Notes under the pieces: generated by a model
Database searches by the model: none
Told to the model about the DNA's origin: nothing
The model's input: only the letters and a program-made list of their open reading frames with translations
Program-made: the position numbers and the translations under genes
Shown: positions 16,905 through 52,151 of the stretch, piece after piece
How the letters are laid out: each line of letters opens with the position of its first letter
Numbering within the stretch: position 1 is the first letter of the stretch
NCBI RefSeq assembly: GCF_006345805.1
Contig: NC_043015.1
Span: 45,012,001-45,076,000 of the forward strand
Direction: 5' to 3'
Source: Octopus sinensis
Lineage: Eukaryota
DNA: 64,000 nucleotides

Positions 16905-17425
16905 AAGGGTATGGCCTGGTCAGCCTGTAATGACGTGCATAAGATCTGGTCATCAAATCTAAGTAGAGACTTCAAACTTGAAATCTTCAAAGCCACAGTC
17001 GAACCAATTCTACTATATGGCTCAGAAACCTGGACATTATCAAAGAAGCTTGAGAGGTGGTTGGATGGAACCTACACTCGCCTCCTTATGAGAGCTCAAA
17101 ATCTCTCGTGGAAGCGTCATCCAACCAAAATGCTAATAAATGGGAAACTACCACCTGTGTCATCTCTTGTGAAAGGTAGGAGAGTCCAGTTTGCTGGACA
17201 TTGTTGTAGAGCTGAAAAAGAGGTAATTTCTACTCTTCTCCTCTGGAAGCCATCAACTCGCAATACCAGAGGGCACACACTCTCCTATCCTGATGTAATC
17301 TCCAGGGATGCAGGCATCCAGCAACAGGACCTCCGTAATGCTTTGATGGACCGTGAAGTCTGGCGTAGCATGGTAAATTCCATTGTCTCGACTACGGTTG
17401 AACAATGATGAGTGATGATGATGAT
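16905..17425 (+). mobile_element. RTE-clade LINE 3' fragment
   Basis: 165-aa ORF 16911..17408 (LLYGSETWTL...RRVQFAGHC) followed by a (GAT)n tail. Confidence 0.9.
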
Positions 17426-25706: not shown

Positions 25707-25886
25707 ACATCATCATCATCATCATTTGGCATCCGCTTTCCATGCTAGCATGGGTTGGACGGTTCAACTGGGGTCTGTGAAGCTGGAAGGCTTCGTCAGG
25801 CCCAGTCAGATCTGGCAGTGTTTCTACGGCTGGATGCCCTTCCTAACGCCAACCACTCCGTGAGTGTAGTGGGTGCTTTTTACGTG
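25707..25886 (-). mobile_element. RTE-LINE 3' end (family B) within a microsatellite
   Basis: (CAT)n-TTTGGCATCCGCTTTCCATGCTAGC. Confidence 0.8.
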
Positions 25887-26175
25887 CTTTTTACATACAT
25901 ACATACATACATATATATATATACCCATACATATACATACATACATACACATACATACATACATACATATATATATATACACATACATACATATATACAC
26001 ACATACATACATACATATACACATACATACACACATACATACATACATATACATACATACATACACACATACATACATACATATATATATATACACATAC
26101 ATATACATACATACATATACATACACACATACATACATACACACATACATATATACATACACAAACATACAGACA
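25887..26175. repeat. (TACA)n/(TA)n compound microsatellite
   Basis: Direct reading. Confidence 0.95.
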
Positions 26176-26499
26176 GACAGAGAAATAGCAGTGTAAAGTA
26201 TCCTGTCAGTTATCTTTCAATTATCATTTCTTCTTTTTTTTTTTTCTTCTTTACCATTCGATTTACCATTATTGGTAGTTTACACAAAATCCGATCGATT
26301 TCCTATTGATTCCTCTTGGAATTGTCTCAGTACTTTCTAAATTTATGCCAGGCAGAATGTTGTGCAGTAGAGAAAAAATATATATATATATATATTTAAT
26401 TGTTTCTATATATTCATCTCCTGCACGACAAGCCCCCCCCCCCGCCTCCCCCACTACTGTCTCACGTCTCTGATCATTCTTTTGAATTCGGAACTCGTG

Positions 26500-26522
26500 T
26501 ATATGTGTGTATAAAATATGTA

Positions 26523-26563
<41 letters not shown>

Positions 26564-26738
26564 ATATATATAATATGTATGTATGTATGTATATATATAT
26601 ATATATTATGTATGTATGTATGTATGTATATATATATATATATAATATATATGTATGTATGTATATATGTATGTATATATGTATGCGTATGTATGTATAT
26701 ATATATATATATATATATAATGTATGTATGTATGTATG

Positions 26739-26784
<46 letters not shown>

Positions 26785-26923
26785 GTATATATGTATGTAT
26801 ATATATATATATATATATATATAATGTATGTATGTATATATATGTATGTATGTATGTATATATATGTATGTATGTATGTATGTATATATGTATATTATGT
26901 ATGTATGTATATAAATATATATG

Positions 26924-26967
<44 letters not shown>

Positions 26968-27413
26968 GTATGTATGTATATATGTATGTATATATATATG
27001 TATGTATGTATATATGTATGTATATATAATATATGTATGTATGTAATATGTATGTATATATATATATACGTATGTATGCATATATGTATGTATGTATATA
27101 TGTATATATATATATATACGTATGTATGCATATATATATGTATGTATATATATATGTATGTATGTATATATATATGTATGTATGTATGTATATATATATA
27201 TATGTATGTATATATATATGTGTGTGTGTATATATATATATATTATATATATATATATATGTATGTATATATATGTGTGTATATATATATATATGTATAT
27301 ATTTCTTTACTACCCACAAAGGGCTAAACAGAGGGGACAAACAAGGACAATATATATATGTATGTATATATGTATATATATATGTATATATATATATATG
27401 TATATATACATGT

Positions 27414-27444
<31 letters not shown>

Positions 27445-27470
27445 CTCACATATGCACACATATATACATC
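26500..27470. repeat. ~1-kb compound (TG)n/(TATG)n/(TA)n microsatellite
   Basis: Direct reading; contains a ~50-bp SINE C fragment at 27300-27350. Confidence 0.95.
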
Positions 27471-28848
27471 AACACATTTGTGTTTTGTATGTACATATGA
27501 AATACTTTATTCATATAATTTATCTGATGGTGTGTGTGTGTCTGTGTGTGTACGTGTGTCAATCGATAACGAAGTGAGGTTGTATCAGTGCAGTACAGTA
27601 CACAGACCGCTTTCTTCCGTCCAAACATAATACTATCTCTCGCTGGACAGATTACTTGACTTGACAGAAAGATTCGAAGGAATGGATAGAGAGAGAGAGA
27701 GAGAGAGAAAAAAAAAAAAGAAGAAAAAGACACAGCTGTAACGAGAGAGTGTGTGAGAGAGTTGGCATCAGGTGCGACAACACAGAAGATATATAGACAG
27801 TGGTCTTTTGAATAATTAATCATGCTTCTAATAAAGACAACCTCTTAAACTCTTGTCTCTGCTTCTGCACCATCTTCCATTAGAAATTATTCCGTCTTTT
27901 ACTGGATAATTATAAACTTGAAGCCATAGATATTTTGCTGTGTATTTTGTGTTTTTGAGTTGGGGTTTTTATTCCGATATTTTTTTGCGGGGTTTGTTGC
28001 TTTCTTTTGAAAACTTCAGTAAAGAAGTTTCTTAATATTTTTTAGCAGGAACTTTTTTTTTTTTTTCAAAAGTGTCGATTACACCCCTCCCCCCACCTCC
28101 TTTTAGACAATAGAAATTGAAATAAATATACCAAGTTTAAAAGCCGTATTTATTTTATAGAGATAAAAAAAAATATTTTATCTTTTTTTTTTTTTTCTTC
28201 GTGTCGGATTTATTATTATTTCTTGTCGTATCTCGTATTTTGTGGACAATTAAGTTTTGAAGATCAGGTTTTATCATTGTTTTTTATATTTTATGGAAAA
28301 TTGATTTAATTTCTTTTTTTTTTTCGAATGAAAATGGGGAGAATCAATAAAAAATAGTAATAAAATCACGATAAAACGATTATTAAAAAAAAAAAGAAGC
28401 AATTTTTCCCGCCTCTGTACTTGTTAACCTTTTCTTCTGAATCTGAATCGAATTCTGGTGCGTTAAGTCGCTAGATGTAACTACAGTAGGTCGCGATCCT
28501 ATTCGAGGTCTTTAAGAATTTATCTGGGGTTCGTCAAACCGCCCATATTTTAATAACGGTGGCAGCAGAACCTTCGTCTTAGACATAGTCGTTATTACGA
28601 TCAATATTTTGTAATTTTCGTTCAATAATTTGTCTCAAAGAAGGACTTGTATATATGCAAGTAATGTCATATTAACTTCTGAAGAACTGCAAAAGGTTCA
28701 CCAGAAATACTTAAGCGGGAACATTTTTGATTGAAGATAAATTTTTTTTTGTTAGGATGATGAATATTTCAATCACATTGATAATCAATATTATTAGTAG
28801 CTGGCTTTTGAATGTCTTGACTAAATTCTTACTATAAAATGAAGTTTA

Positions 28849-30942: not shown

Positions 30943-32476
30943 ATGGATGACAATACAAAAGTAATGTTGAAGCTGGCTACTTTCTTAGCTCAGCAGAACA
31001 ACTCTCGTGTCAACAATACAGGAAACCAAAACCCTCTTACAGAACTGGCTACCCAACTATTGATGAATAGCACTAGTGAAACCCTTGCCATACCAACGTC
31101 TCTGCAATCACACCCAGCAAAACAACTGCCATCTCATCAACCAGACAACAGCACCTCTAGCATGTTTCAAACACAAGCTTCACCAGTGCCTATCTCTCAG
31201 AACACTTCATCAAATCACATGAATAATACTTACAGTGTAAATGCTTCATCACTTCAAGGGAACATCGCAAATACAAAGAGTTCAGTTCCTAGGGCTAATG
31301 AGATGATGTCGCTGAACAATACTTCAAACAAAGACATGATTCCAGTAGCATCCCCAATCAACAGAGATTCTTTTAACGTAATGTCCCCTGTTATGGATCA
31401 AGAAAACTTCTCTCCTATCAACAGAGACAATTTCCCCATCAGCAGGGATACATTTAACGTGACAACTGCCAACTCTTATCCTATCAACTCACCTATGAAT
31501 CACGACACATTCACCACAGCTTCTTCTGTCAACCGAGATTCCTTTACAATGTCATCCGCAGTCAACAGGGAGTCCTATCCTGCAACATCATCTGGAAATT
31601 CACTCTCATCATCCCCAGCGACTAACCGGGAAATGTTAACTGTAATGCCGCCAGTAAATAGAGACACGTTTTCTGCTGCTTCTCCTGTCAACCGAGAAAC
31701 GTATCCCAATAATCCTGCTATGAATAGGGATACATTTAACGTCAACCGAGACAACATGAGTGGGAATTGTCCTGAGACAAGAGATTCATTTTCTTCAGAT
31801 TGCTCTGCTACTAGGGTCTCCTTTAACATAACATCACCAAGAAATCGAGAAAATTACACAAGTACTCCAGTTATTGGTCGAGACTCGTATTCGGTAACCT
31901 CCCCAGTTAATAGCGACTCTTACGGATCTGGGATGCCAACGAGCCATGAGTCTTACCAAGTCAGTTCTCCTTCTAACCGAATTTCTGAAGATTCTGCTAT
32001 GAACTCTTTGAATATGATGCGAGGGGATATCTCCAGAAATACAGCTTTAACAAGAGTTCCTGATGAGATGAATATGAACCAAGTGGAGGACATGGTTGTC
32101 ACTAGTGGCGGTGGTGGTGGAAGTAGTAACGGTAGTAGTATTAACAGCGGTTTGGGCTCAATCAACAGTTCAATGTCATGCAACCTGTCTTCCATGAACT
32201 CTTCTTCCAATGAAGTGCATATAAACTCTTCAAATAATTGTGCCTATTACAAGCGACCGATACAAGGAGAAAAGGGACGATCGTATCCCCAGCCAGTCAT
32301 ACTTCGATCACGACCTCGTCCTGTTAAAGAGAGGTCTAAAAGAGGTCCCAAAGAGAAGGATTATTTCAGAACTGCTTTCTTTTGTCTACCAAATGTGACA
32401 GCCCGACTCCCACGCTTTACGTCCTCTGATCCTCGTGAGCAAGACCTTGTCCTCGATTATCAAAAACAAGGTTATG
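30943..32476 (+). CDS. HECT-like pseudo-ligase gene, coding exon 1 (aa 1-511; S/N/T-rich region with 11-aa repeats, basic patch, start of central domain)
   Basis: Acceptor TTTCCAG at 30897; in-frame TGA at 30913 upstream of ATG 30943; 1.5-kb open frame; donor TAT G|GTAAGA (phase 1). Confidence 0.85.
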
Positions 32477-32568
32477 GTAAGAAATGTTTCTTTTATGTTC
32501 TTTTAATTAATGCCCCCTCCCCTCTCAAAAAATTTCTTGTCTTGCAAGTTACTTGGTTACCCTTCCAG

Positions 32569-32975
32569 TGCTGGTGCCACATAAAAATCATCCAGTCCAG
32601 AGTGTGAAGTGGTTGGCATTTGGAAGGGCATCTGGATGTAAAAAGACCATGCCAAAACTGACCTCACCTATGCTGGTGCCACATAAAAAGCATCCAGTCC
32701 AGAGTGTGAAGTGGTTGGCATTTGGAAGGGCATCTGGATGTAAAAATACCATACTAAAACTGACCTCACCTATGCTGGTGCCACATAAAAAGCACTCAGT
32801 CCACTCTATGGGGTGGTTGGTGTTAGGAAGAGCATCCAGCAGTAAAAGCCATGCCAAAACAGACACGGTAGCTAGGGTAGTTTTTCTAGCTTGGTGTAGT
32901 CTCCCACCTGGCCGGCTCCTGTCAAACCGTCCAACCCATGCCAGCATGGAAGGCAGACGTTAAACAATGATGATG
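32569..32975 (+). repeat. Intronic 102-bp tandem repeat derived from a family B element
   Basis: TGCTGGTGCCACATAAAAA starts at 32569, 32671 and 32773; ends in a family B (GAT)n tail. Confidence 0.85.
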
Positions 32976-33243
32976 AAAATAATACTCTTCCTGTTTTGTA
33001 TCATCATCATCATCATCATCATCATTTAACGTCTGTTTTCCATGCTGGCATGGGTCAGATGGTTTAAGGTGGTTGGCATTAAGAAGTGCATCCAGCCAGC
33101 CATATCAAAACAGTGAAGCCTGGTGCAATCTTCTGGCTTGCCAGCTCCTGTCAAACCATCCAACCCATGGAAAATGAATGTTGTTGTTGTTGATGATGAT
33201 GGTGATGATGATCGCTTGACCTAAATTAATTTTTCTTTTACAG

Positions 33244-33476
33244 GTTTCCCAGCAAAAGACTACTTTGAAGGCAAACCTCAGAAGACTTATATTCGTCTCA
33301 GTCATGATGAAGAAAGTTTCCGTTGCTTTCTGTTAAGTATTTATCCGAAACTTGAGGGAAAGTATTATGAACTTTATAGAATTGATCGGCAGAGAAATTT
33401 GGTTCGCATTGAAGCTAAGACCCCCCGCGGTATCAAGAATGCTAAATACCAAGGAACGATCATCATTTTGCCCTAC
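33244..33476 (+). CDS. HECT-like gene, coding exon 2
   Basis: TTTTACAG|GT TTC CCA...; reads GFPAKDYFEGKPQKTYIRLSHDEESFRCFLLSIYPKLEGKYYELYRIDRQRNLVRIEAKTPRGIKNAKYQGTIIILPY; donor GTAAGT; phase 1 to 0. Confidence 0.85.
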
Positions 33477-33527
33477 GTAAGTTTGCAAGGTCGCACTATT
33501 TGTATTTGTACTTCATTTAACAGCTTT

Positions 33528-33712
33528 AGGACCTTTTCGGTTTGAACGGCAGTTTTTACAAATAATTTCCACGTAACTAAACACTTTTAAACTTCGTATA
33601 CTGGTAGAATGTGTTTATAAAACATCTTTTTCTCTTGGCTTTATTGAGAAAATTCTATAGTTTGTAAGATATTTGTTGTTTTTTACTTCAATTTCTGCAA
33701 TTTCAACCATCC
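33528..33712. mobile_element. Single end of the 7872-type MITE
   Basis: AGGACCTTTTCGGTTTGAACGGCAG...AAACTTCGTATACTGGTAGAATGTG. Confidence 0.7.
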
Positions 33713-33895
33713 CTTCTCATTCAGAACTCCCACTACAAGATATAATGATTAGGTAATGAAATGACTTCAACAGGGCCAATGTTTCATCTGTAAAAAAACA
33801 CAATGCGAAACATCCACTTATCAGTTGGCAATTAGTAGAAATTTACAATAGTCTAAAGTGGCTGAAGACTTTTGCATGGTACCGGAGTGGTTGGT

Positions 33896-34058
33896 GCTAC
33901 ACTCACGGACTGGTTGGCGTTAGGAAGGGCATCAAGCTGTATAAACACTGCCAGATCAGACTGGAGCCTGGTGCAGCCTCATGGCTTCCCAGACCCCGGT
34001 CGAACCGTCCAACCCGTGCTAGCACAGAAAACAGACATTAAACGATGATGATGATGAT
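33896..34058 (+). mobile_element. RTE-LINE 3' end (family B)
   Basis: Ends AACAGACATTAAACGATGATGATG. Confidence 0.8.
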
Positions 34059-34388
34059 ATATAGAATTAAGAGTCAGAACCTCCATAAAGTAATTCAATT
34101 AATAATGAAAGATGCTATCTATAATAAAATATAAATTTAAATATATTATTATTAACATTATACTAAAAATTTACCTGAACTTTTCTGAAAACTTAAGAAG
34201 TTAGACATGATGGTTGTCAAGTTAAAGTGCTGGATTATTGATTAAATTTTCATAGTTTCAAATTAGACTCTGCCATCGTTTTCTCTCCTTTGGCTGGCCA
34301 TATAATTTTTCATATCTCAGTCTGCCTGGCTGACAACAAGCTTAATTCATACTTCATGATTAACAGATTACTGCAATAAAAAGTGTGG

Positions 34389-34772
34389 AGTGGCTGTGTG
34401 GTAAGTAGCATGCTTACCAACCACATGGTTCCGGGTTCAGTCCCACTGCGTGGCACCTTGGGCAAGTGTCTTCTACTATAGCCTCGGGCTGACCAAAGCC
34501 TTGTGAGTGGATTTGGTAGACAGAAACTGAAAGAAGTCCGTCGTATATATGTATACATATATATATGTGTGTATATTTGTGTGTCTGTGTTTGTCCCCCC
34601 AACATCGCTTGACAACTGATGCTGGTGTGTTTACGTCCCTGTAACTTAGCGGTTCGGCAAAAGAGACCGATAGAATAAGTACTAGGCTTACAACGAATAA
34701 GTCCTGGGATCAATTTACTCGACTAAAGGCAGTGCTCCAGCATGGCCACAGTCACATGACTGAAACAAGTAA
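34389..34772 (+). mobile_element. SINE family A
   Basis: Full head-to-tail match. Confidence 0.85.
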
Positions 34773-35210
34773 AAGAGTAAATGTTGAGACTCCTTCATCA
34801 TTATCATCATCATCATTTATTATCCGTTTTCCCGTGCTTGCATGGGTCAGATGGAATTTGTTGAGGCAGGTTTTGTACAGTCAAATAACCTTCCTGTCAC
34901 CAATCCTCATCTATTTCTAAGCAAGGTAATATTTCCCCCGCAGTTAGACGTGTGTTTCCGGTACCAGTTGCGTACTGGAGTCGATCTAACTGACTAGCCC
35001 CCTACCCAAAAATTTCGGGCCTTGTGCCTAGAGTAGAAAAGATTCATTTCAGTCATTTGACTGCAGCCATGCTGGAACATTGTCTTCAAAATTTACAAAA
35101 CCCTCCAAAAATGTGAAGCAATTTAATAAACTAAATTATGAATTAAACTTTCTTACTTTTTAATTTAATTTCTTCTTTTGTATTTTTTCAAAAACTTTTT
35201 TTTTATTTAG

Positions 35211-35426
35211 CCTGAAGCTTCAAATCCACCATCAGCTGTTGTGCACAACCCAAGTAGTATTGGAGACTTTCCTGTCCAGCTATGCAATGATTCCATTGAA
35301 AATATTAATGAAAACAATGAATGTGAAGAAGAAAACATGATACCATCACCAAGTGTCTGTGGTTCCACGCCCCAGCAATCTCCTTTCATGCCACCAAACC
35401 ATGAAGTAGCTACATATGATCATAAG
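35211..35426 (+). CDS. HECT-like gene, coding exon 3 (acidic/Pro-rich linker)
   Basis: Long T tract-TTTAG|CCT GAA GCT...CAT AAG|GTAACT; 216 nt, phase 0 to 0; PEASNPP...VATYDHK. Confidence 0.75.
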
Positions 35427-35671
35427 GTAACTATCTTTAATATAAATTATGATTGATTGAATTGGCAGAATTGATTAAGTGTCAGACAAATGTTAGTAAT
35501 ATCCATTTACACTGTAAGTTGAAATCTCGTAATGTTTGTCTTGCATTTCAACCTTGCAGAGATTTTATCCTGTTAGGGAATATGTTGAATAAAATCATAA
35601 TTAACTGATCCTCCTGTATTTTCTTTTGCCCAAGGCCAGGAACTTTACAGCACCCCTTGTATGTATGTATA

Positions 35672-35975
35672 TGTCACGTGATCGACCAGGCTATCAGATG
35701 TTGCTACGCATCGCTGGTCACAATGTGCTTCGCATTGTTTTAGCCTTCAAATGATGCCACCCCACTGGCTAAGGGAGCAGGCCAACAGAAGACAGAGTGA
35801 GAGAAAGTTGTGGTGAAAGAGTACAGCAGGGATCGCCACCACCCCCTGCTGGAGCCTCGTGGAGTTTTAGGCGATTTCGCTCAATAAACACTCACAACGC
35901 CTGGTCTAGGAATCGAAACCGCGATCCTACGACCGCGAGTCTGCTGCCCAAACCACTGGGCCATTGCGCCTCCAC
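35672..35975 (-). mobile_element. tRNA-headed SINE family D
   Basis: Reverse complement of the 19023/29857 head. Confidence 0.75.
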
Positions 35976-36030
35976 ACACATATATATATATGTGTGTTCC
36001 CAAATACATGCACACACGTGTGTGAGTGTA

Positions 36031-36245
36031 TGAGGGGTGCTGAAAAGTTAGTGGCTTTAAGGTATCATGAAAGTCCTGGCTGGAGGTCCAACCTTCCAAG
36101 TTCTTTTACTGAGCTACAAAAAACTGAAGGACCCCTGCAATAAGTTTATGAATCTGAAAGGGGAATTTGTTGAATTAAATCATAATTAACTGATCCATCT
36201 GTATTTTCTTTTACTCAAAGCCAGGAACTTTTTAGCATCCCCTCA
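36031..36245. mobile_element. Mariner-type MITE
   Basis: TA|TGAGGGGTGCTGAAAAGTT...AACTTTTTAGCATCCCCTCA inverted ends; partial copy at ~35570-35660. Confidence 0.7.
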
Positions 36246-37258
36246 TGTGTGTGTGTCTCCTCCCTCACATGATAATAATTAATAAATGAATGTTGCTGTC
36301 ATTCATTTCCAATATTCTTTGAAAACATGTCAGGCCATGGGGAAATATTACCTTGCTTGGAAACTAGTGAGGGATGGCAACAAGAAGATGCATTCGTCTC
36401 TAGAAAATCTGCCTCTATAAACTCTGTCCAACGCATGCAAGCATGGAAAAGAGAACATGAAAATGACGGTGATGATGATGATGATGAATAAAATAGGGGA
36501 CAGGTTTGTTATTGGGTGGGTTCAACTGGTTATTCATGCCTATAAATTTATGGCCTTAAGTCAGTTTCAGAATTATTAGTATTCATCATCATCATCATCA
36601 TCACGATCATCCAGTGTCTATCTTCCATGCTGGCATGGGTTGGATGGGTTGACAGGAGCTGGCAAGCTTGAGAACTGCACCAGGATCCATTGTTTGTTTC
36701 GGCATGGTTTTTGTGGCTGGATGCCCTTCCGAACACCAACCACTTTACAGAGTTGACTGGGTACTTTCCGTGTAGCGCCAGCACTTGCAAGGTCACCAAG
36801 TAACTTGCAAGATCTTTTGAGAGTGAGGGGATGATATTGGAGGCAGTGGCTTTGTGCCAGGTGGTGAGAGGTTATAGTATAACAGAGGGGCAGAAACAGG
36901 TGTTTGCTGTAGAGGGGATACATGGTTACCCTAGTCAGACGAAGAGAGTGAGAGAGAGCAGGAGGAGTGAGCAAGATTGAGAGAGATGGTGGCGCTGTGA
37001 ATATAAATGGGATTATTATTACATAAGGGACAAGAATATAAATGGGATTATTATTGCTGGGAGTACAAGAGTAGAAAGTTCAGGTTGAATGCAAAACAGG
37101 GGGCGGGGTAGTGACTGGTGAAACCTGGCTGTATAGAGTCGGGACAACAAGATAGCAATGATACAGATGGCAGGGCAGGGAGGACAGGGTTGACCTGCAG
37201 GATTAGGGAGGAAGAGATGAATAAAGTATTAATTTATTCCATGTTTTCTACTTCAAAG

Positions 37259-37325
37259 GAATCCTACGAGTTATCACCTCCATCTCCAGAACGTGATATC
37301 AAACCATTTCAAAGATTTGATTCTG
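37259..37325 (+). CDS. HECT-like gene, coding exon 4
   Basis: TTTTCTACTTCAAAG|GAA TCC...TCT G|GTACGT; ESYELSPPSPERDIKPFQRFDS; phase 0 to 1, which is required to join exon 3 to exon 5 in frame. Confidence 0.7.
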
Positions 37326-38463
37326 GTACGTATCCATTATTCATCCTGATACTTTTTTTACCTCATTTTTGAAGACAATGAATTTCAGAATATCATATTA
37401 TCTTTTTGAGAATTAGTCCTAAGTAGCATCTTTTAAATTGTCTTATTTTTTTTTTCATATCTTTCGTACTTTAAATACTGCTTGAATTTTCTCCATATTT
37501 AACAATCATGAAATATATGTAGTTAGGTGCAGGTGTAGCCGTGTGGTTTAAGACCCTTGCTTCCCTACTGTATAGTTTTAGGTTCAGTCCCACTGCGCAG
37601 CACCTTGGATGCTTATTTTCGATCTTCTATGAAAACATGTCCAGTCATAGGAAAATATTACCTTGCTTAGAAACAAGCGAGGTTTGTCAATCTGACCATT
37701 GAAAAATCTACCCCAACAAGTTCTGGATCATGCAAGCAAGGAAAAATTAACATTAAAACAATGATGATGATATTTCACTTCTAAATTAGAGGTTAATAAT
37801 CTGAAAGTTTATAATCATACATGCATTGTTGTTTTAATTTTTTTTTAAATTAATTTTTTTACTTGTTTCAGTCATTGAACTGGTGGCCATGCTGGAGCAC
37901 CACCTTCAAAGGTTTAGTCAAACAAATTGATTCCAGTACCTATTTTTGAAGTCTACTACTTACCCTATCAGTCTCTTTTGACAAACTAAGCTACCTGGAC
38001 ATAAACAAACCTACACCAGTTGTCAAGTGGTTGTGGGAAAAGACACACAGTGGGTGTCATACATATATGTATATGACACACATCATCATCATTGTTAATG
38101 TTCATATTCCATACTGGGATGGGTTGGATGGTTTAACAGGAGTTCACAAGCTGCTGGAGAGCTGCACCAAGCTCCAATTGTCTGTTTTGGTGCCACATAA
38201 AAAGCCCCATGTTGATGCCACATCAAAAGCACCCGTGCTGGTGCCATGTGTAAAGAACTGGTGCTAGTTCGTCATAAAAAGCACCCAGTACACACTGTAA
38301 AGTGGTTGGCATTAGGAAAGGCATCCAGCTGTAGAAACCATGCCAAGACACACTCATATACTCATATATATATATATATATATATATATACACTTAAGGT
38401 GGTTTTAGAGTCAGATCCTGGCTGCTATTTTCAGCATGGCGGTATCTCGTAGATACCCTAAGT

Positions 38464-38509
<46 letters not shown>

Positions 38510-38826
38510 GTGGGCTTCAACATAGTTTCTGCCAGCCAAATTCACTCATGAGGCTTTCACAGACACAAGGTTATAGGAGAAGACACTTGCTCAATGTACC
38601 AGGCAGTGGGACTGAACCTGAAACCACCCAGTTGGAAAGCAAGCTTTTTAACCACACAGCATACCATTAAATTTTTTTTTTTACATCTTAGTTGTTACTG
38701 TCAGGCTTTTGTTTTATACTCTTGCACTAGTTCCATTTATTTTCTATTCTCTGATTGATTTAATATTTAGATGTTCCAGTTGTATCTAATTTCGAATTTT
38801 AATTTCTCTTATTTTCTTTTGCACAG

Positions 38827-39890
38827 AAAATTCTGAATTATTTCAAAGAATTTCCCTCATAAAGCAAACTCTTTCCGAAACGAGAAACTTGAAGATGGAT
38901 AAAAGGTCTATCGTTGGAAATCTGTTGGAGTTGTATCGTGCTGAGCATACCATCTGTAACTATGACATCCGGGTCACATTTAACAATGACCCCAATCTCA
39001 CTTTATCGAACGATCCATCATTTCAAACACGTCACATGTTTTGTATATTCTGGAAGAAAATTTTCAACAATAATTTCGTCGGAAATGAAGAATACTATCC
39101 AGTCATAAGTCCCGAGGCTGAAGACGATATGTTTGAAATTCTCGGCCGCATTCTCGCTCATGGATTAATATTATGTAACTATTGGCCTATCCAGTTTGCT
39201 GTGGCATCAGCCACCTACATGCTCTGTCAAGGCTGCTCTGATGAGCTCATTTTGAAATCATTCACCAATTGCCTCAGTGGATTTGAGCAGAGGATTGTCA
39301 TGTCAGCCCTAAAGGAATCTCGTTCCCAAATTGGAGAACCAACTTTCTCTTCCACTCTAGAAACCAATTTATCAGCATTTCTATGGACTAACGGTTGTCA
39401 ATTAGACCGACCTGGTCAGCTTCCTGGTATTTTGTTAAGCATAGCCAGAAGTTACCTTATATACCAACCATACTGGGCACTTGTGAAGCTGAAAAAAGGA
39501 ATGGAACACTGCAGCAATAAAGTATTCAAAGATTGTTCTGAAAGCGATGTTGAAAATTTATACAAAACATTAACACCTGAAGCATCTCAAATTTGCAAAT
39601 TAATCAAGTATGAGTTTAGTCAAGAAGAATCTCACCAGGAAATTGAGAAAACATTACAGACTTACTTAGAAAAATTACTTTGGGAAATGTCATTAGTTGA
39701 ACTTGCAAACTTGTTACAATTGTGGACTGGTGTGAACTGCTTGTCACAACAAACTTTGTTTGTGAAATTTGTGAACACTTCAGATCAGTTGCTGTTTCAG
39801 AATCATAAATCTCTGCTCCGAATCCCTCGCAAAATACAGACATTTAAAGAATTTACAGAATCCATTCAATTACTTCTGGATGGAACATGA
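38827..39890 (+). CDS. HECT-like gene, coding exon 5: HECT-like domain without the catalytic Cys
   Basis: TTTTGCACAG|AA AAT...; HECT-like landmarks IRVTF, FWKKIF..FVG.EEYYP, ILGRILAHG, IA...LIYQP, LYKTLTP, LLQLWTG, LLRIP...F; stop TGA 39888-39890. Spliced CDS 3114 nt = 1037 aa. Confidence 0.85.
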
Positions 39891-41847
39891 TAAATTCTGT
39901 TTGCATGAGGGAGGAAAAAGATTACCTATTCATTTATATACATACACACATACATATACATATATATATATATACACATGTTTATTTTCTCCTTTCATAG
40001 ATTTTTCTTTATTAGAAATGAAGATAAATCTCAGCTATTTTTGTTGTCTTCTTTTATTTAAAAAGGTTGGTCTGATTGTTGTTATCGATATGAAAGTTGC
40101 CACCAGATGTAAACCGATAATTTAAATTACAATTATTTTTGAAATGTAACCTTGCCAATTCCCTTTGAATAATTCAAAAGGAAAGAGGTCCGTAAACTAG
40201 TTCCACACTAAGACATCAACTGAAAATGCATGTGCTCCATCTACCACATTCACTATGACCTTGTATGTATTAACCATTATCACCACCACCATCATCATCA
40301 TCATATAAAACAGTAATAATAATCTGCAAAGAAACATTAGGTTGTCTCAAAAATGCTTAAGGAACCAGCACCAGACTGGATGCTTTTTAGGATCTAGTTT
40401 GGTACCCATCAAAGCTAAAATCGTTCCTTCCATCTATACTTAATAAAACAGCCAATCAGTATTTATGTACTTCTTACTGACAAAGTCCTTATGCTTAACC
40501 AAAGGAGATCATAATTTTGATCATTCATAATTGTTTTAATTTCAATACTCTCTCGTTCTCTCTCATGTTTCTCTCCATCAACAGCAATCTAATCATTGCA
40601 TCAATTGTACAGAGATATAAGATGTCTATCAGCACAACAAAACACCATACTGTGTAGCCAAGTGTATCACACATTTTCAAGTTTCAGCTTTCTGTTAAAA
40701 GCCATTTCACCACAGATACAAAACTACTATTGAGAAATAATGCACAATTTTCATCATTTTTTTTTTTTACTTTCCCTAAGAATATAGGTTTATATGATAA
40801 ACCTATAATTCATAATAAGCCAATATACATATACCAAGACACAATATTGGTTGTAATATAACCACTAAGTCAACATTGTTTGTAATACCATTGCTAGTTC
40901 AGTAATACAACTAATTTGTTCAATTTTTGCTAAAATTGATTCCATTTTCCATCCTTCATGGGGAGGGTTTATAAAATAAGCACCAGTCATATATTAAAAT
41001 CAGGTCAGTTTCTCCCTGTCTTTCTAAAAAGTATTGTGCCTTGTTGAAAGAAATTGATAATTCAGATAGAAGTGGATATAATCATCATCATCATTATTTA
41101 ATGTTCACTTTTCCAAGCTTGCATGGGTCAGACGAAATTTGCTGAGACAGACTTTCTATGTCAGATGCCAGATACCCTTCCTGTCACCAACTGTCACCTG
41201 TTTCCAATCAATATTATTTTCCCTTTGCTAAACATTGTTTTTCATAGAAGACTGAAATAAACAACTTCATTTGTACGACAACAAGGCCTGTTTACAACCA
41301 TCACGGTTATCTAGACAAGGACATACACACACACACACTTCTTTCATTTTCCATCTATAAAGTTCACTCACCAAGCCTTGGTCAGTTTGGGATTAAAGTA
41401 GAAGACTTGCTGAAGGTGCTGTGCAGTGGGACTGAACCCAAGACCACATGGTTGGGAAGCAAGCTTCTTAACCACACAACTATGCTTGCACCTATTAGGA
41501 ATGTAACAAAATAACTTCACAGAGGTTGAAGTGGGTTTTTTTTTAATGATTTAGTATGTAGGAAGGGGCCTTTGCAGGCTCTCCTGCACCTGTGAGACTA
41601 TTATCATTAATGTCATCTTCGAATCTTAATAAGTCAACACCTCAACACCTGAGAGAAAGATGAACCGTGAAGGATTTCCAGAGGGAAGACATTCTGAGAA
41701 GGAAAGATTGGGTGTACTGAGTAGTACCAGGTCTAGGGGTGGAGGTGAACACAGTATGGGTGGAGAGACAAGTAGGACAAGAATGTCTCCAAGACTTCTT
41801 GAAAGTTTATAAAATAAGTGCTCAGTATAAAGACTATTATAGTCATA

Positions 41848-51263: not shown

Positions 51264-52151
51264 TTAACGGCGTTTAGTTCCACCAAATCCAGAGGCTGTT
51301 CGAGTTTCGGAGCTGCTGAAGCTACTTGAGGGGCCAGAATGATAACCTGTTGGTGACCCAAACCAGTCTCTTTGATACCCATCATTGTAATAAGAGTTCG
51401 AGCGGTAACCACCTCTGTTTCCAAAAAGGTAGCCGAGAAATGCACCAGAAGCTAGACCACTGAAAAATCCAGGCTGTTGTCCGGTATTACTGTGAGATGT
51501 GGAGCTGTACGGAGGTGGAGCATCCTGGCCTGAGCAGTAATCGGATCTGAAACCGTATGGCGGTGGAGGGGCACTTGGAGTTGACCCGCTTTGTGCGCCT
51601 CCGGGAAACGATGATGGATTGGTAGGTGTTGCAAAACAAGTACGATACACGAAGAAGATAATCATAATAACAAACAGGAAAGTGAAAATTGAGCCGAACC
51701 CAAAACCCGATTCGTGTTTCGACGAGTAATGGTTGAAGTAACTGCCTGAGCCTTTCTGGTTTACGTAGTCAATGTCGTATTCCAGACCGCAAGAGCCAGC
51801 CAGGATGTAAGGGTCGTCAGCATACTCGTAACCTTCGCACGAGACAACGATCTGTCCGAAGCGATACCTTTTGTCCATGTCCGTTTTACATTCCCACTGG
51901 ATATCGTAGCCGTCCCAACCTCTGTTGTAACACTGGACGGTCTGTGGAATGACGGACCGACATCCTGCTGATCCGCCAGTGCATTTCAACTGAGCGACTG
52001 GGGAAGACCTCCTCGCGGTCGTCATCTGTCCACGATTTAGAGTGATCACGTTGATGTCCTGCAACAGGACTTTCCTTCCTTCGATTTCTTGGCCATAAAT
52101 CAAAACCAGTAAAATAAGTGTAAGTGCGGGAAGTCTCTTGATTTCTGTCAT
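51264..52151 (-). CDS. SARAF: Store-operated calcium entry-associated regulatory factor (SARAF/TMEM66), single coding exon, 295 aa
   Basis: Signal peptide; luminal domain with LTL..G.MTT.RRSSPV.QLKC, VQCYNRGWDGYDIQWECK, SCEGYEY..DPYIL.GSCGLEY and 6 Cys (57, 64, 74, 88, 105, 121); one TM helix (~153-169); PPPY motifs; C-terminal SGFGGTKRR. Confidence 0.95.
   Translation of the reverse strand: MTEIKRLPALTLILLVLIYGQEIEGRKVLLQDINVITLNRGQMTTARRSSPVAQLKCTGGSAGCRSVIPQTVQCYNRGWDGYDIQWECKTDMDKRYRFGQIVVSCEGYEYADDPYILAGSCGLEYDIDYVNQKGSGSYFNHYSSKHESGFGFGSIFTFLFVIMIIFFVYRTCFATPTNPSSFPGGAQSGSTPSAPPPPYGFRSDYCSGQDAPPPYSSTSHSNTGQQPGFFSGLASGAFLGYLFGNRGGYRSNSYYNDGYQRDWFGSPTGYHSGPSSSFSSSETRTASGFGGTKRR

What the first reader, a model, noticed from the sequence alone, without database searches (positions are those of the whole stretch)
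38827..39890. HECT-like domain has lost both hallmark motifs
Seen: after IRVTF the usual E.G.D.GG..RE motif is replaced by NNDPNLTLSNDPSFQTRH. After LLQLWTG the catalytic P.AHTC..L.LP loop is replaced by DQLLFQNHKSLLRIP (39795-39827), with no Cys, and the chain ends LLLDGT without the usual near-terminal Phe. The frame is still open for 354 codons. Inference: a conserved pseudo-E3 that may act as a decoy for E2s, substrates or active HECT paralogues.
Basis: partly seen in the sequence, partly recalled or inferred. Interest (0 to 1): 0.7.

Follow-up and report, generated by a model that had tools for sequence, protein, structure and literature searches.

The report
Conserved cysteine-less HECT domain in octopus
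The last exon of an octopus gene encodes a well-folded copy of the HECT ubiquitin-ligase domain that has lost its catalytic cysteine and other hallmark motifs, yet has been kept under strong selection across molluscs, so it is most likely a non-enzymatic "pseudo-ligase" that works by binding rather than by catalysis.

Summary
Window 38827..39890 (+) is the fifth and last coding exon of a GT-AG gene (30943..39890). Its spliced product is identical to the 1037-aa Octopus vulgaris/sinensis "uncharacterized protein LOC115221967".

The exon encodes a complete bilobal HECT fold:
- AlphaFold2 gives pLDDT 92, and every top Foldseek PDB hit is a HECT domain.
- hhalign to Cys-retaining relatives gives E 9.5e-49, and those relatives match HUWE1/TOM1 HECT at E 5e-15.

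It scores below the Pfam HECT threshold and lacks all three hallmarks. Three independent alignments place His326 (39804-39806) on the catalytic Cys column. Orthologues carry Y/R/K/N/D/E/S/F/G there. The GE.G.D.GG..RE motif and the -4 Phe are also gone.

The loss is old and single. All 25 Cys-less sequences form one clade (octopuses, bivalves, abalone) nested among Cys-retaining relatives. Selection is strong (dN/dS 0.078 against O. bimaculoides), so this is not decay.

The protein also carries a conserved beta-grasp (ubiquitin-like) domain that Cys-retaining paralogues share. The "pseudo-E3" reading is supported. The "decoy" mechanism is untested. An invariant Cys304 (GVNCL) leaves a small chance of relocated catalysis.

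The parts
38827..39890 (+). Last coding exon (exon 5). It encodes the whole HECT-fold domain (353 aa plus stop), which is the finding itself.
   Evidence: Acceptor cag|38827. The translation is identical to the C-terminus of P0151. AlphaFold2 pLDDT 92, pTM 0.89. Foldseek top hits are all HECT domains.
38982..39035 (+). NNDPNLTLSNDPSFQTRH, the segment that replaces the N-lobe GE.G.D.GG..R(E/D) motif.
   Evidence: hhalign and phmmer columns. Conservation here is 0.41 in the Cys-less clade and 0.64 in catalytic relatives.
39783..39827 (+). DQLLFQNHKSLLRIP, the former active-site loop (P.AHTC..L.LP in relatives).
   Evidence: Loop conservation is 0.47 in the Cys-less clade and 0.70 in catalytic relatives.
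39804..39806 (+). His326 codon (CAT) on the catalytic-cysteine column. It is Tyr in O. bimaculoides and R/K/N/D/E/S/F/G in other molluscs.
   Evidence: Three alignment methods agree. Residue states per sequence are in the tree output.
39738..39740 (+). Cys304 codon in GVNCL. It is invariant in the Cys-less clade and aligns with the K/R of GTS(K/R)VP in canonical HECTs.
   Evidence: Listed among the invariant columns of A1. Variable (C/I/L/T/P) in the sister clade. The K/R correspondence is inferred by chaining the A2-TOM1 alignment.
30943..32476 (+). Coding exon 1. It holds the start ATG, the N-terminal LxxLA(T/R)QLL motifs, an Octopus-specific NR(D/E)x(F/Y) repeat region (31360-31956), the basic KRGPKEKD patch (from 32338) and the first half of the beta-grasp domain (from about 32278).
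33244..33476 (+). Coding exon 2, the second half of the conserved beta-grasp (ubiquitin-like) domain.
   Evidence: AlphaFold2 pLDDT 88. Foldseek gives weak but uniformly UBX/RAWUL/PB1/UBL hits.
35211..35426 (+). Coding exon 3, a poorly conserved linker.
37259..37325 (+). Coding exon 4, a linker that ends in phase 1 and joins to 38827.
   Evidence: exact spliced translation.

Best explanation
The finding is the terminal exon of a five-exon Octopus gene, the orthologue of LOC115221967/LOC106878106. It encodes a complete, stably folded bilobal HECT domain of the divergent G2E3-like/UBR5-like type.

The domain has lost the thioester-forming cysteine (now His326), the N-lobe GE.G.D.GG..RE motif and the -4 hydrophobic tail residue. 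The loss happened once, in the ancestor of a clade shared by cephalopods, bivalves and gastropods. The rest of the fold has stayed under strong purifying selection since then.

It is therefore a HECT pseudoligase. It cannot run the canonical E2-to-E3-Cys-to-substrate relay and must act through binding.

Inferred, not shown: the retained N-lobe and C-lobe surfaces, together with the conserved N-terminal beta-grasp (ubiquitin-like) domain and the basic/disordered region, form a scaffold or regulator within the ubiquitin system. The likely partners are an E2~Ub, ubiquitin or a UBL (possibly its own beta-grasp domain in cis), or a catalytic paralogue of the same architecture.
For: **Shown**
- The gene model is exact and identical to an annotated protein.
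- HECT homology: hhalign of the Cys-less clade against Cys-retaining relatives gives probability 100, E 9.5e-49 over 329 columns.
- Those relatives hit the TOM1, HUWE1, NEDD4 and E6AP HECT domains down to E 5e-15.
- Several relatives pass the Pfam HECT gathering score.
- AlphaFold2 gives pLDDT 92. Foldseek gives 97 PDB hits at E<=1e-3 and all 50 listed are HECT domains, the best being UBR5 at E 4e-11, TMq 0.68.
- The Cys column holds H, Y, R, K, N, D, E, S, F or G in the clade.
- The Cys-less sequences form one clade in the NJ tree. The sister clade (Priapulus, Mytilus) and 78 of 80 other relatives keep the Cys.
- Relaxation is motif-specific. The two motif regions are the least conserved parts in the Cys-less clade (0.41 and 0.47 against a domain mean of 0.56). 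In catalytic relatives they are the most conserved (0.64 and 0.70 against 0.52). The N-lobe core is more conserved in the Cys-less clade (0.67 against 0.54).
- dN/dS is 0.078 for this exon and 0.074 for the whole gene.
- An orthologue is present as mRNA-like contigs of about 3.5 kb with UTRs in 21 sequencing runs.
- The beta-grasp domain is shared with Cys-retaining HECT proteins from mussel and jellyfish.

**Inferred**
- Everything about what the domain binds.
Against: - No binding partner, expression pattern or phenotype is known.
- The invariant Cys304 could be a relocated nucleophile.
- The NJ tree is a quick distance tree without support values.
- Many clade members come from unlabelled metagenome or SRA contigs.
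- The window sequence itself does not reach Pfam's HECT threshold.
- The beta-grasp assignment rests on weak Foldseek E-values (8e-3 or worse).
Confidence: 0.72

Rival explanations
1. E2 or paralogue decoy. The dead HECT sequesters E2~Ub, or substrates, or heterodimerises with active HECT paralogues. It acts as a dominant-negative brake on their activity.
For: - The region corresponding to the N-lobe small subdomain is retained, with conserved motifs in both groups (CSD..L..SF...S..E; L..YG....P).
- Catalytic paralogues with the same beta-grasp plus HECT architecture coexist in mollusc genomes, for example Mytilus P0058 and P0034 alongside the pseudo-orthologue P0014.
Against: - Nothing tested here separates inhibition from scaffolding or from a ubiquitin-independent role.
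- E2-contact residues could not be mapped reliably at 12-14% identity to solved HECT-E2 complexes.
- The long conserved N-terminal regions suggest a dedicated function of their own, not simple titration.
Confidence: 0.15
2. Cryptic catalysis. The domain is still a ligase that uses a relocated nucleophile. The candidate is the clade-invariant Cys304 in the W.G..CL loop, in the way some pseudoenzymes have migrated catalytic residues.
For: - Cys304 is one of only 20 invariant columns in the Cys-less clade.
- The same column is variable (C/I/L/T/P) in the Cys-retaining sister clade, so it became fixed when the canonical Cys was lost.
- Bivalve orthologues have further cysteines in this loop (WCGYDCLC).
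Against: - The supporting catalytic environment is gone as well: the H and T of AHTC, the -4 Phe, and the N-lobe GG..RE motif.
- The column also holds Cys in some relatives that keep the catalytic Cys, for example P0045, P0064 and P0025. That fits a structural role.
- No geometry could be measured.
Confidence: 0.07
3. Ubiquitin-independent neofunctionalisation. The HECT fold has been reused purely as a structural or protein-interaction module, for example in a nuclear complex, with no remaining link to E2s or ubiquitin.
For: - All three catalytic hallmarks are lost.
- The invariant basic KRGPKEKD patch and the long disordered N-terminus fit a nuclear or nucleic-acid-associated protein.
- The N-lobe core is more conserved than in catalytic relatives, which suggests new constraints.
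Against: - It retains a beta-grasp (ubiquitin-like) domain that also accompanies catalytic HECTs of this subfamily.
- The C-lobe is retained at full length.
- There is no positive evidence for any other pathway.
Confidence: 0.2
4. A decaying pseudogene, a gene-prediction artefact, or a chance resemblance to HECT.
For: - No Pfam HECT hit for the window sequence.
- The word-indexed homology search returned nothing.
Against: - The reading frame is intact with canonical splice sites.
- dN/dS is 0.078.
- Full-length orthologues exist in cephalopods, bivalves and a gastropod.
- An orthologue is represented by mRNA-like contigs.
- Profile and fold evidence support HECT.
Confidence: 0.01

Closest known systems
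G2E3 and the 'G2E3-like Metazoa' group of class IV HECT ligases (Grau-Bove et al. 2013, PMC3673628)
   Same: - Short, highly divergent HECT domain of about 330-350 aa at the C-terminus.
- Variable N-terminal partners.
- The best structural match here is UBR5, the other class IV member.
- The nearest sequence relatives are the stand-alone or fused Cys-retaining HECTs of alignment A2.
   Different: - G2E3 and those relatives keep AHTC/ANTC, GE.G.D.GG..RE and a hydrophobic -4 residue.
- G2E3 has PHD/RING-like fingers. I found none here or in the relatives I scanned.
- G2E3's HECT was called non-functional or inactive (PMC3673628 and PMC12511632, citing Brooks 2008). A 2026 highlight reports that its catalytic Cys is needed for H3K14 ubiquitination (PMC12920882).
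- The octopus protein has no such Cys at all.
- Direct comparison with a G2E3 sequence was not done.
Canonical HECT E3 ligases (E6AP/UBE3A, NEDD4 family, HUWE1/TOM1, UBR5)
   Same: Bilobal N-lobe/C-lobe fold, and homology through intermediate profiles.
   Different: - No catalytic Cys.
- No N-lobe GG..RE motif.
- No -4 Phe.
- Below the Pfam threshold.
Ubiquitin E2 variants (UEV: Mms2/Uev1, TSG101), cited from general knowledge
   Same: A catalytic-cysteine-less copy of a ubiquitin-transfer fold, kept under selection, that works by binding ubiquitin or partner enzymes. This is the best analogy for how a Cys-less HECT could work.
   Different: - A different fold (UBC, not HECT).
- UEV partners and functions are experimentally established.
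- Nothing is established for this protein.
RING pseudoligases in the TRIM family (bioRxiv 10.1101/2024.10.15.614675)
   Same: E3-type domains that are retained but lack ligase activity.
   Different: They are RING domains, which never form a thioester, and inactivity there was shown experimentally. Here the inference comes from the loss of the nucleophile.

Membership tests
HECT domain (Pfam PF00632 / HECT-type E3 ligases) | Bilobal HECT fold (N-lobe plus C-lobe) | tested here: met
   AlphaFold2 pLDDT 92, pTM 0.89. Foldseek PDB gives 97 hits at E<=1e-3, and all 50 listed are HECT domains at probability 1.00.
HECT domain (Pfam PF00632 / HECT-type E3 ligases) | Sequence match to the family model above the curated threshold | tested here: not met
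   - No HECT hit for the window exon, even at E<=1.
- The Haliotis orthologue scores 17.9 bits against a cut-off of 23.9.
- Homology is shown only transitively: hhalign E 9.5e-49 to relatives that do pass.
HECT domain (Pfam PF00632 / HECT-type E3 ligases) | Catalytic cysteine in the P.AHTC..L.LP loop, about 30-35 residues from the C-terminus | tested here: not met
   His326 sits on that column. Orthologues have Y/R/K/N/D/E/S/F/G.
HECT domain (Pfam PF00632 / HECT-type E3 ligases) | N-lobe motif F.GE.G.D.GG..REff | tested here: not met
   Replaced by NNDPNLTLSNDPSFQTRH. It is absent and unconserved across the clade.
HECT domain (Pfam PF00632 / HECT-type E3 ligases) | Hydrophobic (-4 Phe) residue in the C-terminal tail | tested here: not met
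   The tail is ...LLLDGT. F or M at -4 occurs in 55 of 82 relatives and 1 of 25 members of the Cys-less clade.
HECT domain (Pfam PF00632 / HECT-type E3 ligases) | Forms a ubiquitin thioester and transfers ubiquitin | not testable with these tools
   Needs biochemistry.
G2E3 family / G2E3-like Metazoa (class IV HECT) | HECT domain groups with G2E3 or GL-Metazoa in a phylogeny | not tested
   - No G2E3 reference sequence was available to the tools.
- The only support is indirect: the best structural hit is UBR5, a class IV member, and the description of GL-Metazoa as very divergent HECTs (PMC3673628).
G2E3 family / G2E3-like Metazoa (class IV HECT) | PHD/RING-like zinc fingers N-terminal to the HECT domain (G2E3 proper) | tested here: not met
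   No zinc-finger or PHD Pfam hit in P0001, the 1033-aa O. bimaculoides orthologue that is 98% identical over this exon, or in the other orthologues scanned.
Pseudoenzyme (pseudoligase) | Homologous to an enzyme family but lacking its catalytic residues | tested here: met
Pseudoenzyme (pseudoligase) | Maintained by purifying selection, so not a pseudogene | tested here: met
   dN/dS is 0.078 for the exon and 0.074 for the gene. Orthologues span three mollusc classes.
Pseudoenzyme (pseudoligase) | Demonstrated lack of catalytic activity | not testable with these tools
   Needs a ubiquitination or thioester assay. The invariant Cys304 keeps this open.

The most novel reading that the evidence does not exclude
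The clade did not simply lose catalysis. It rewired it. The clade-invariant Cys304 in the W.G..CL loop, which became fixed when the canonical Cys was lost, would serve as a relocated nucleophile or as part of a new active site. That would make this a mechanistically new type of HECT-fold transferase, possibly for a UBL or a non-protein substrate.
Probability: 0.06. Interest if true: 0.85.

Novelty: new variant of a known kind. Interest (0 to 1): 0.5.

Why it matters
HECT ligases are defined by their thioester-forming cysteine. The papers I could search treat it as universal.
- Two full-text searches found no described, conserved Cys-less HECT family.
- "Pseudo-HECT" appears once as a relevant term, for suspected pseudogene fragments in Leishmania.

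This clade has kept the whole bilobal fold under strong selection since before cephalopods, bivalves and gastropods diverged. By general knowledge that split dates to roughly the Cambrian.

It would be the HECT counterpart of the UEV proteins and of the RING pseudoligases.

It also offers a natural experiment. The conserved surfaces that remain should mark the non-catalytic interaction sites of a HECT domain: E2, ubiquitin, or partner binding.

Its practical weight is limited for now. The organisms are not standard models, and no phenotype or partner is known.

Tried and rejected
- **Pfam scan of the exon.** No HECT hit. Only sub-threshold SNU71_RBD and DUF7415 hits, judged to be noise.
- **phmmer against PDB sequences.** Only a viral "16L protein" at E 0.029, judged to be chance.
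- **Profile of the Cys-less clade alone against PDB.** No hit at E<=10. A Cys-retaining intermediate profile was needed.
- **Word-indexed homology search with the exon.** It returned nothing, although an identical protein exists. The exhaustive HMMER search found 507 relatives.
- **Rfam scan of the window.** Nothing.
- **Ser at the Cys column.** My first by-eye alignment put Ser328 of NHKS there, and put the Cys of P0002 (SHQC) at the catalytic position. All three alignment methods place His326 there instead. The P0002 Cys is two residues downstream.
- **Search for true G2E3 orthologues (PHD fingers) among longer relatives.** None detected, so the G2E3 label stays untested.
- **Brooks et al. 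2008 (PMC2494922).** Not held in the library. I relied on secondary citations.
- **Logan members P0153 and P0154 as possible transcripts.** They read through into intron 1, so they are genomic ORFs.
- **Distance from Cys304 to the old active site.** Not measurable, because model coordinates are not exposed to scripts.
- **Mapping of E2-contact residues.** Abandoned, because identity to solved HECT-E2 complexes is only 10-16%.

Full report
**What is at the coordinates**

The window is animal DNA of about 37% G+C with TA/CA microsatellites and SINE-like repeats. The stretch 38827..39890 follows a polypyrimidine tract and the acceptor cag|. It is open in one frame for 353 codons up to the TGA at 39888-39890.

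An exhaustive HMMER search found a 1033-aa Octopus bimaculoides protein that is 98% identical over the whole exon. Its cluster holds the 1037-aa O. vulgaris CAI9736961.1 / O. sinensis XP_029647925.1 protein, "uncharacterized protein LOC115221967". UniProt calls the O. bimaculoides entry "HECT domain-containing protein".

A five-exon GT-AG model translates exactly to that 1037-aa protein: 30943-32476, 33244-33476, 35211-35426, 37259-37325, 38827-39890. The finding is therefore the complete last coding exon of a real, annotated gene. The window comes from O. vulgaris or O. sinensis. A SARAF gene lies downstream on the minus strand both here (51264-52151) and at the O. bimaculoides locus, which shows synteny.

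**Is it a HECT domain?**

Direct sequence tests say no:
- No Pfam HECT hit.
- No meaningful PDB sequence hit.
- A profile of the mollusc orthologues alone finds no solved structure.

Homology through intermediates and by fold says yes:
- The orthologue profile (A1) aligns with a profile of 18 Cys-retaining relatives of about 350 aa (A2). hhalign gives probability 100 and E 9.5e-49 over 329 columns.
- A2 in turn matches the HECT domains of TOM1, HUWE1, AREL1, ITCH, NEDD4, E6AP and UBR5, down to E 5e-15 and mostly full length.
- Many of those relatives pass Pfam's HECT threshold.
- AlphaFold2 on A1 gives a confident model with mean pLDDT 92 and pTM 0.89.
- All 50 listed Foldseek PDB hits are HECT domains at probability 1.00. 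The best is UBR5 at E 4.4e-11, TMq 0.68.

The moderate TM-scores are expected for a two-lobed domain with a flexible hinge.

**Are the hallmarks really lost?**

Yes, all three.

1. The catalytic cysteine.
   - phmmer, hhalign and a joint MAFFT alignment agree. They align LLFQNHKSLLRIPRKIQTFKEF with P(I/V)AHTC..L(E)LP..Y.SY.EF, which places His326 (CAT, 39804-39806) on the catalytic Cys column.
   - My first by-eye guess of a Cys-to-Ser change was wrong.
   - O. bimaculoides has Tyr at that position. Other clade members have R, K, H, N, D, E, S, F or G. No alternative nucleophile is conserved there.
2. The N-lobe motif. NNDPNLTLSNDPSFQTRH occupies the place of GE.G.D.GGv.R(D/E).
3. The tail. 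It ends in LLLDGT. F or M at -4, within a W.(F/M)D.. motif, occurs in 55 of 82 Cys-retaining relatives and in 1 of 25 clade members.

**How old is the loss, and how constrained is the domain?**

The orthologue clade has the same overall architecture. It comprises octopuses, bivalves (Dreissena, Potamilus, Sinanodonta, Saccostrea, Tegillarca, Pecten, Mytilus, Solemya) and the gastropod Haliotis.

A neighbour-joining tree of 107 domains gave these results:
- Every Cys-less sequence falls in one clade.
- The sister group (Priapulus, Mytilus paralogues) keeps ANTC and GEE..D..GVTRE.
- 78 of 80 remaining relatives keep the Cys.

This points to one ancient loss. The tree is a quick distance tree without support values.

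Against O. bimaculoides, the Nei-Gojobori estimates are as follows:

| Region | dS | dN | dN/dS |
|---|---|---|---|
| Last exon (HECT-like) | 0.092 | 0.0072 | 0.078 |
| Whole gene | 0.095 | 0.007 | 0.074 |

The last exon has 19 synonymous and 6 non-synonymous differences. The flanking intron and the 3' flank are 95.5-96.3% identical.

Conservation is redistributed in the way expected for a pseudoenzyme:

| Region | Cys-less clade | Catalytic relatives |
|---|---|---|
| N-lobe motif region (aa 50-70) | 0.41 | 0.64 |
| Former active-site loop (aa 319-328) | 0.47 | 0.70 |
| Whole domain | 0.56 | 0.52 |
| N-lobe core (aa 72-120) | 0.67 | 0.54 |

An orthologue (P0002) is carried by contigs of about 3.5 kb with 5' and 3' untranslated regions and an uninterrupted 795-codon ORF. 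It appears in 21 sequencing runs. This indicates transcription, but the species is not labelled.

**The rest of the protein**

- Short N-terminal (M/L)xxLA(T/R)Q(L/I)L motifs.
- A disordered region. In Octopus it carries about 14 copies of NR(D/E)x(F/Y) at a spacing of about 11 residues.
- An invariant basic KRGPKEKD patch.
- A strongly conserved domain of about 150 aa with no Pfam match.

AlphaFold2 models that domain at pLDDT 88. Foldseek hits are weak (E 8e-3 or worse), but they are uniformly beta-grasp folds: p47 UBX, Ring1B RAWUL, PB1 and USP UBL domains.

The same domain precedes Cys-retaining HECT domains in a Mytilus paralogue (P0058, which also has a ubiquitin-like segment), in a jellyfish protein (P0053, SAHTC) and in P0146. 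The ancestral architecture was therefore beta-grasp plus active HECT. The mollusc orthogroup is a derived Cys-less branch of it.

**How it most likely works**

Shown: the canonical E2-to-Cys-to-substrate relay cannot operate, because the nucleophile column is unconserved and its supporting motifs are gone. The fold is nonetheless maintained.

Inferred: the protein acts through binding, as a scaffold or regulator in the ubiquitin system. Likely partners are an E2, ubiquitin or a UBL (possibly its own beta-grasp domain), or a catalytic paralogue. This would be analogous to the Cys-less UEV proteins.

The main open loophole is Cys304 in GVNCL (39738-39740):
- It is invariant in the clade.
- It is variable in the sister clade.
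- I could not measure its position relative to the old active site.
- It also occurs in some relatives that keep the catalytic Cys. That favours a structural role.

**Comparison with what is known**

Grau-Bove et al. (PMC3673628) describe class IV HECTs. These are UBR5, G2E3 and the "G2E3-like" groups, and they form a fast-evolving, highly divergent set with varied architectures. The best structural match to UBR5 fits that neighbourhood. I did not test membership of G2E3 proper. The PHD/RING-like fingers that characterise G2E3 are absent.

G2E3's own HECT domain has been called non-functional or inactive (PMC3673628; PMC12511632). A 2026 highlight reports that its catalytic Cys is required for H3K14 mono-ubiquitination (PMC12920882). 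In any case G2E3 retains the Cys.

Two full-text searches found no described family of conserved Cys-less HECT domains. RING pseudoligases in TRIM proteins are described.

**Verdict**

- The "conserved pseudo-E3" interpretation is supported.
- The "decoy" mechanism is untested.
- This is a new variant of a known kind: a HECT-fold pseudoligase clade. It is of moderate interest, and the experiments that would settle its activity and partners are inexpensive.

Noticed in passing
window 51264-52151 (-): Single-ORF SARAF gene (store-operated calcium entry regulator; Pfam PF06682, E 8e-82). It is also the downstream neighbour of the O. bimaculoides orthologue (L001 21106-21987), so synteny is conserved.
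   Followed up: partly
window 32278-32476 + 33244-33476 + 35211-35222 (+): A conserved domain of about 150 aa with no Pfam match, in the same gene. It is predicted to be a beta-grasp/ubiquitin-like fold (pLDDT 88; weak UBX/RAWUL/PB1/UBL Foldseek hits). An invariant basic KRGPKEKD patch precedes it. The same domain occurs before Cys-retaining HECT domains in Mytilus and a jellyfish.
   Followed up: yes
window 31360-31956 (+), exon 1: An Octopus-specific run of about 14 NR(D/E)x(F/Y) motifs spaced about 11 residues apart in the disordered N-terminal region. Bivalve and gastropod orthologues lack it. Its function is unknown.
   Followed up: partly
window 30964-31062 (+), exon 1: Two copies of a short helix-like motif (M/L)xxLA(T/R)Q(L/I)L at the N-terminus. 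It recurs in the Dreissena, Potamilus and Solemya orthologues and may be a conserved linear interaction motif.
   Followed up: no
window 25755-27577 (both strands): A long TA/CA-rich microsatellite block that generates artefactual 150-280-aa YIYIY/CMYVC ORFs on both strands.
   Followed up: no
window 16911-17408 (+): A 165-aa ORF resembling the C-terminal tail of a non-LTR retrotransposon ORF2. Its only support is a weak, sub-threshold DUF6451 hit. It is probably a dead repeat fragment.
   Followed up: partly
window 38585-38658, 41405-41478, 37548-37607: SINE-like repeat copies, 77-83% alike and some inverted, flank the last exon. TA microsatellites sit on either side of the exon, upstream at 38356-38517 and downstream at 39924-39996.
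   Followed up: no
protein P0141 (remote relative, not in the window): An 853-aa protein with two RRM domains and a HECT domain whose active-site loop reads AHTH. This is an independent Cys-to-His replacement outside the mollusc clade. The organism is unknown.
   Followed up: no
protein P0012 (Tegillarca granosa orthologue): The beta-grasp domain contains a tandemly repeated VKTPRAIKDLKYQGTLVVI segment that no other orthologue has. It is probably an assembly or gene-model artefact.
   Followed up: no
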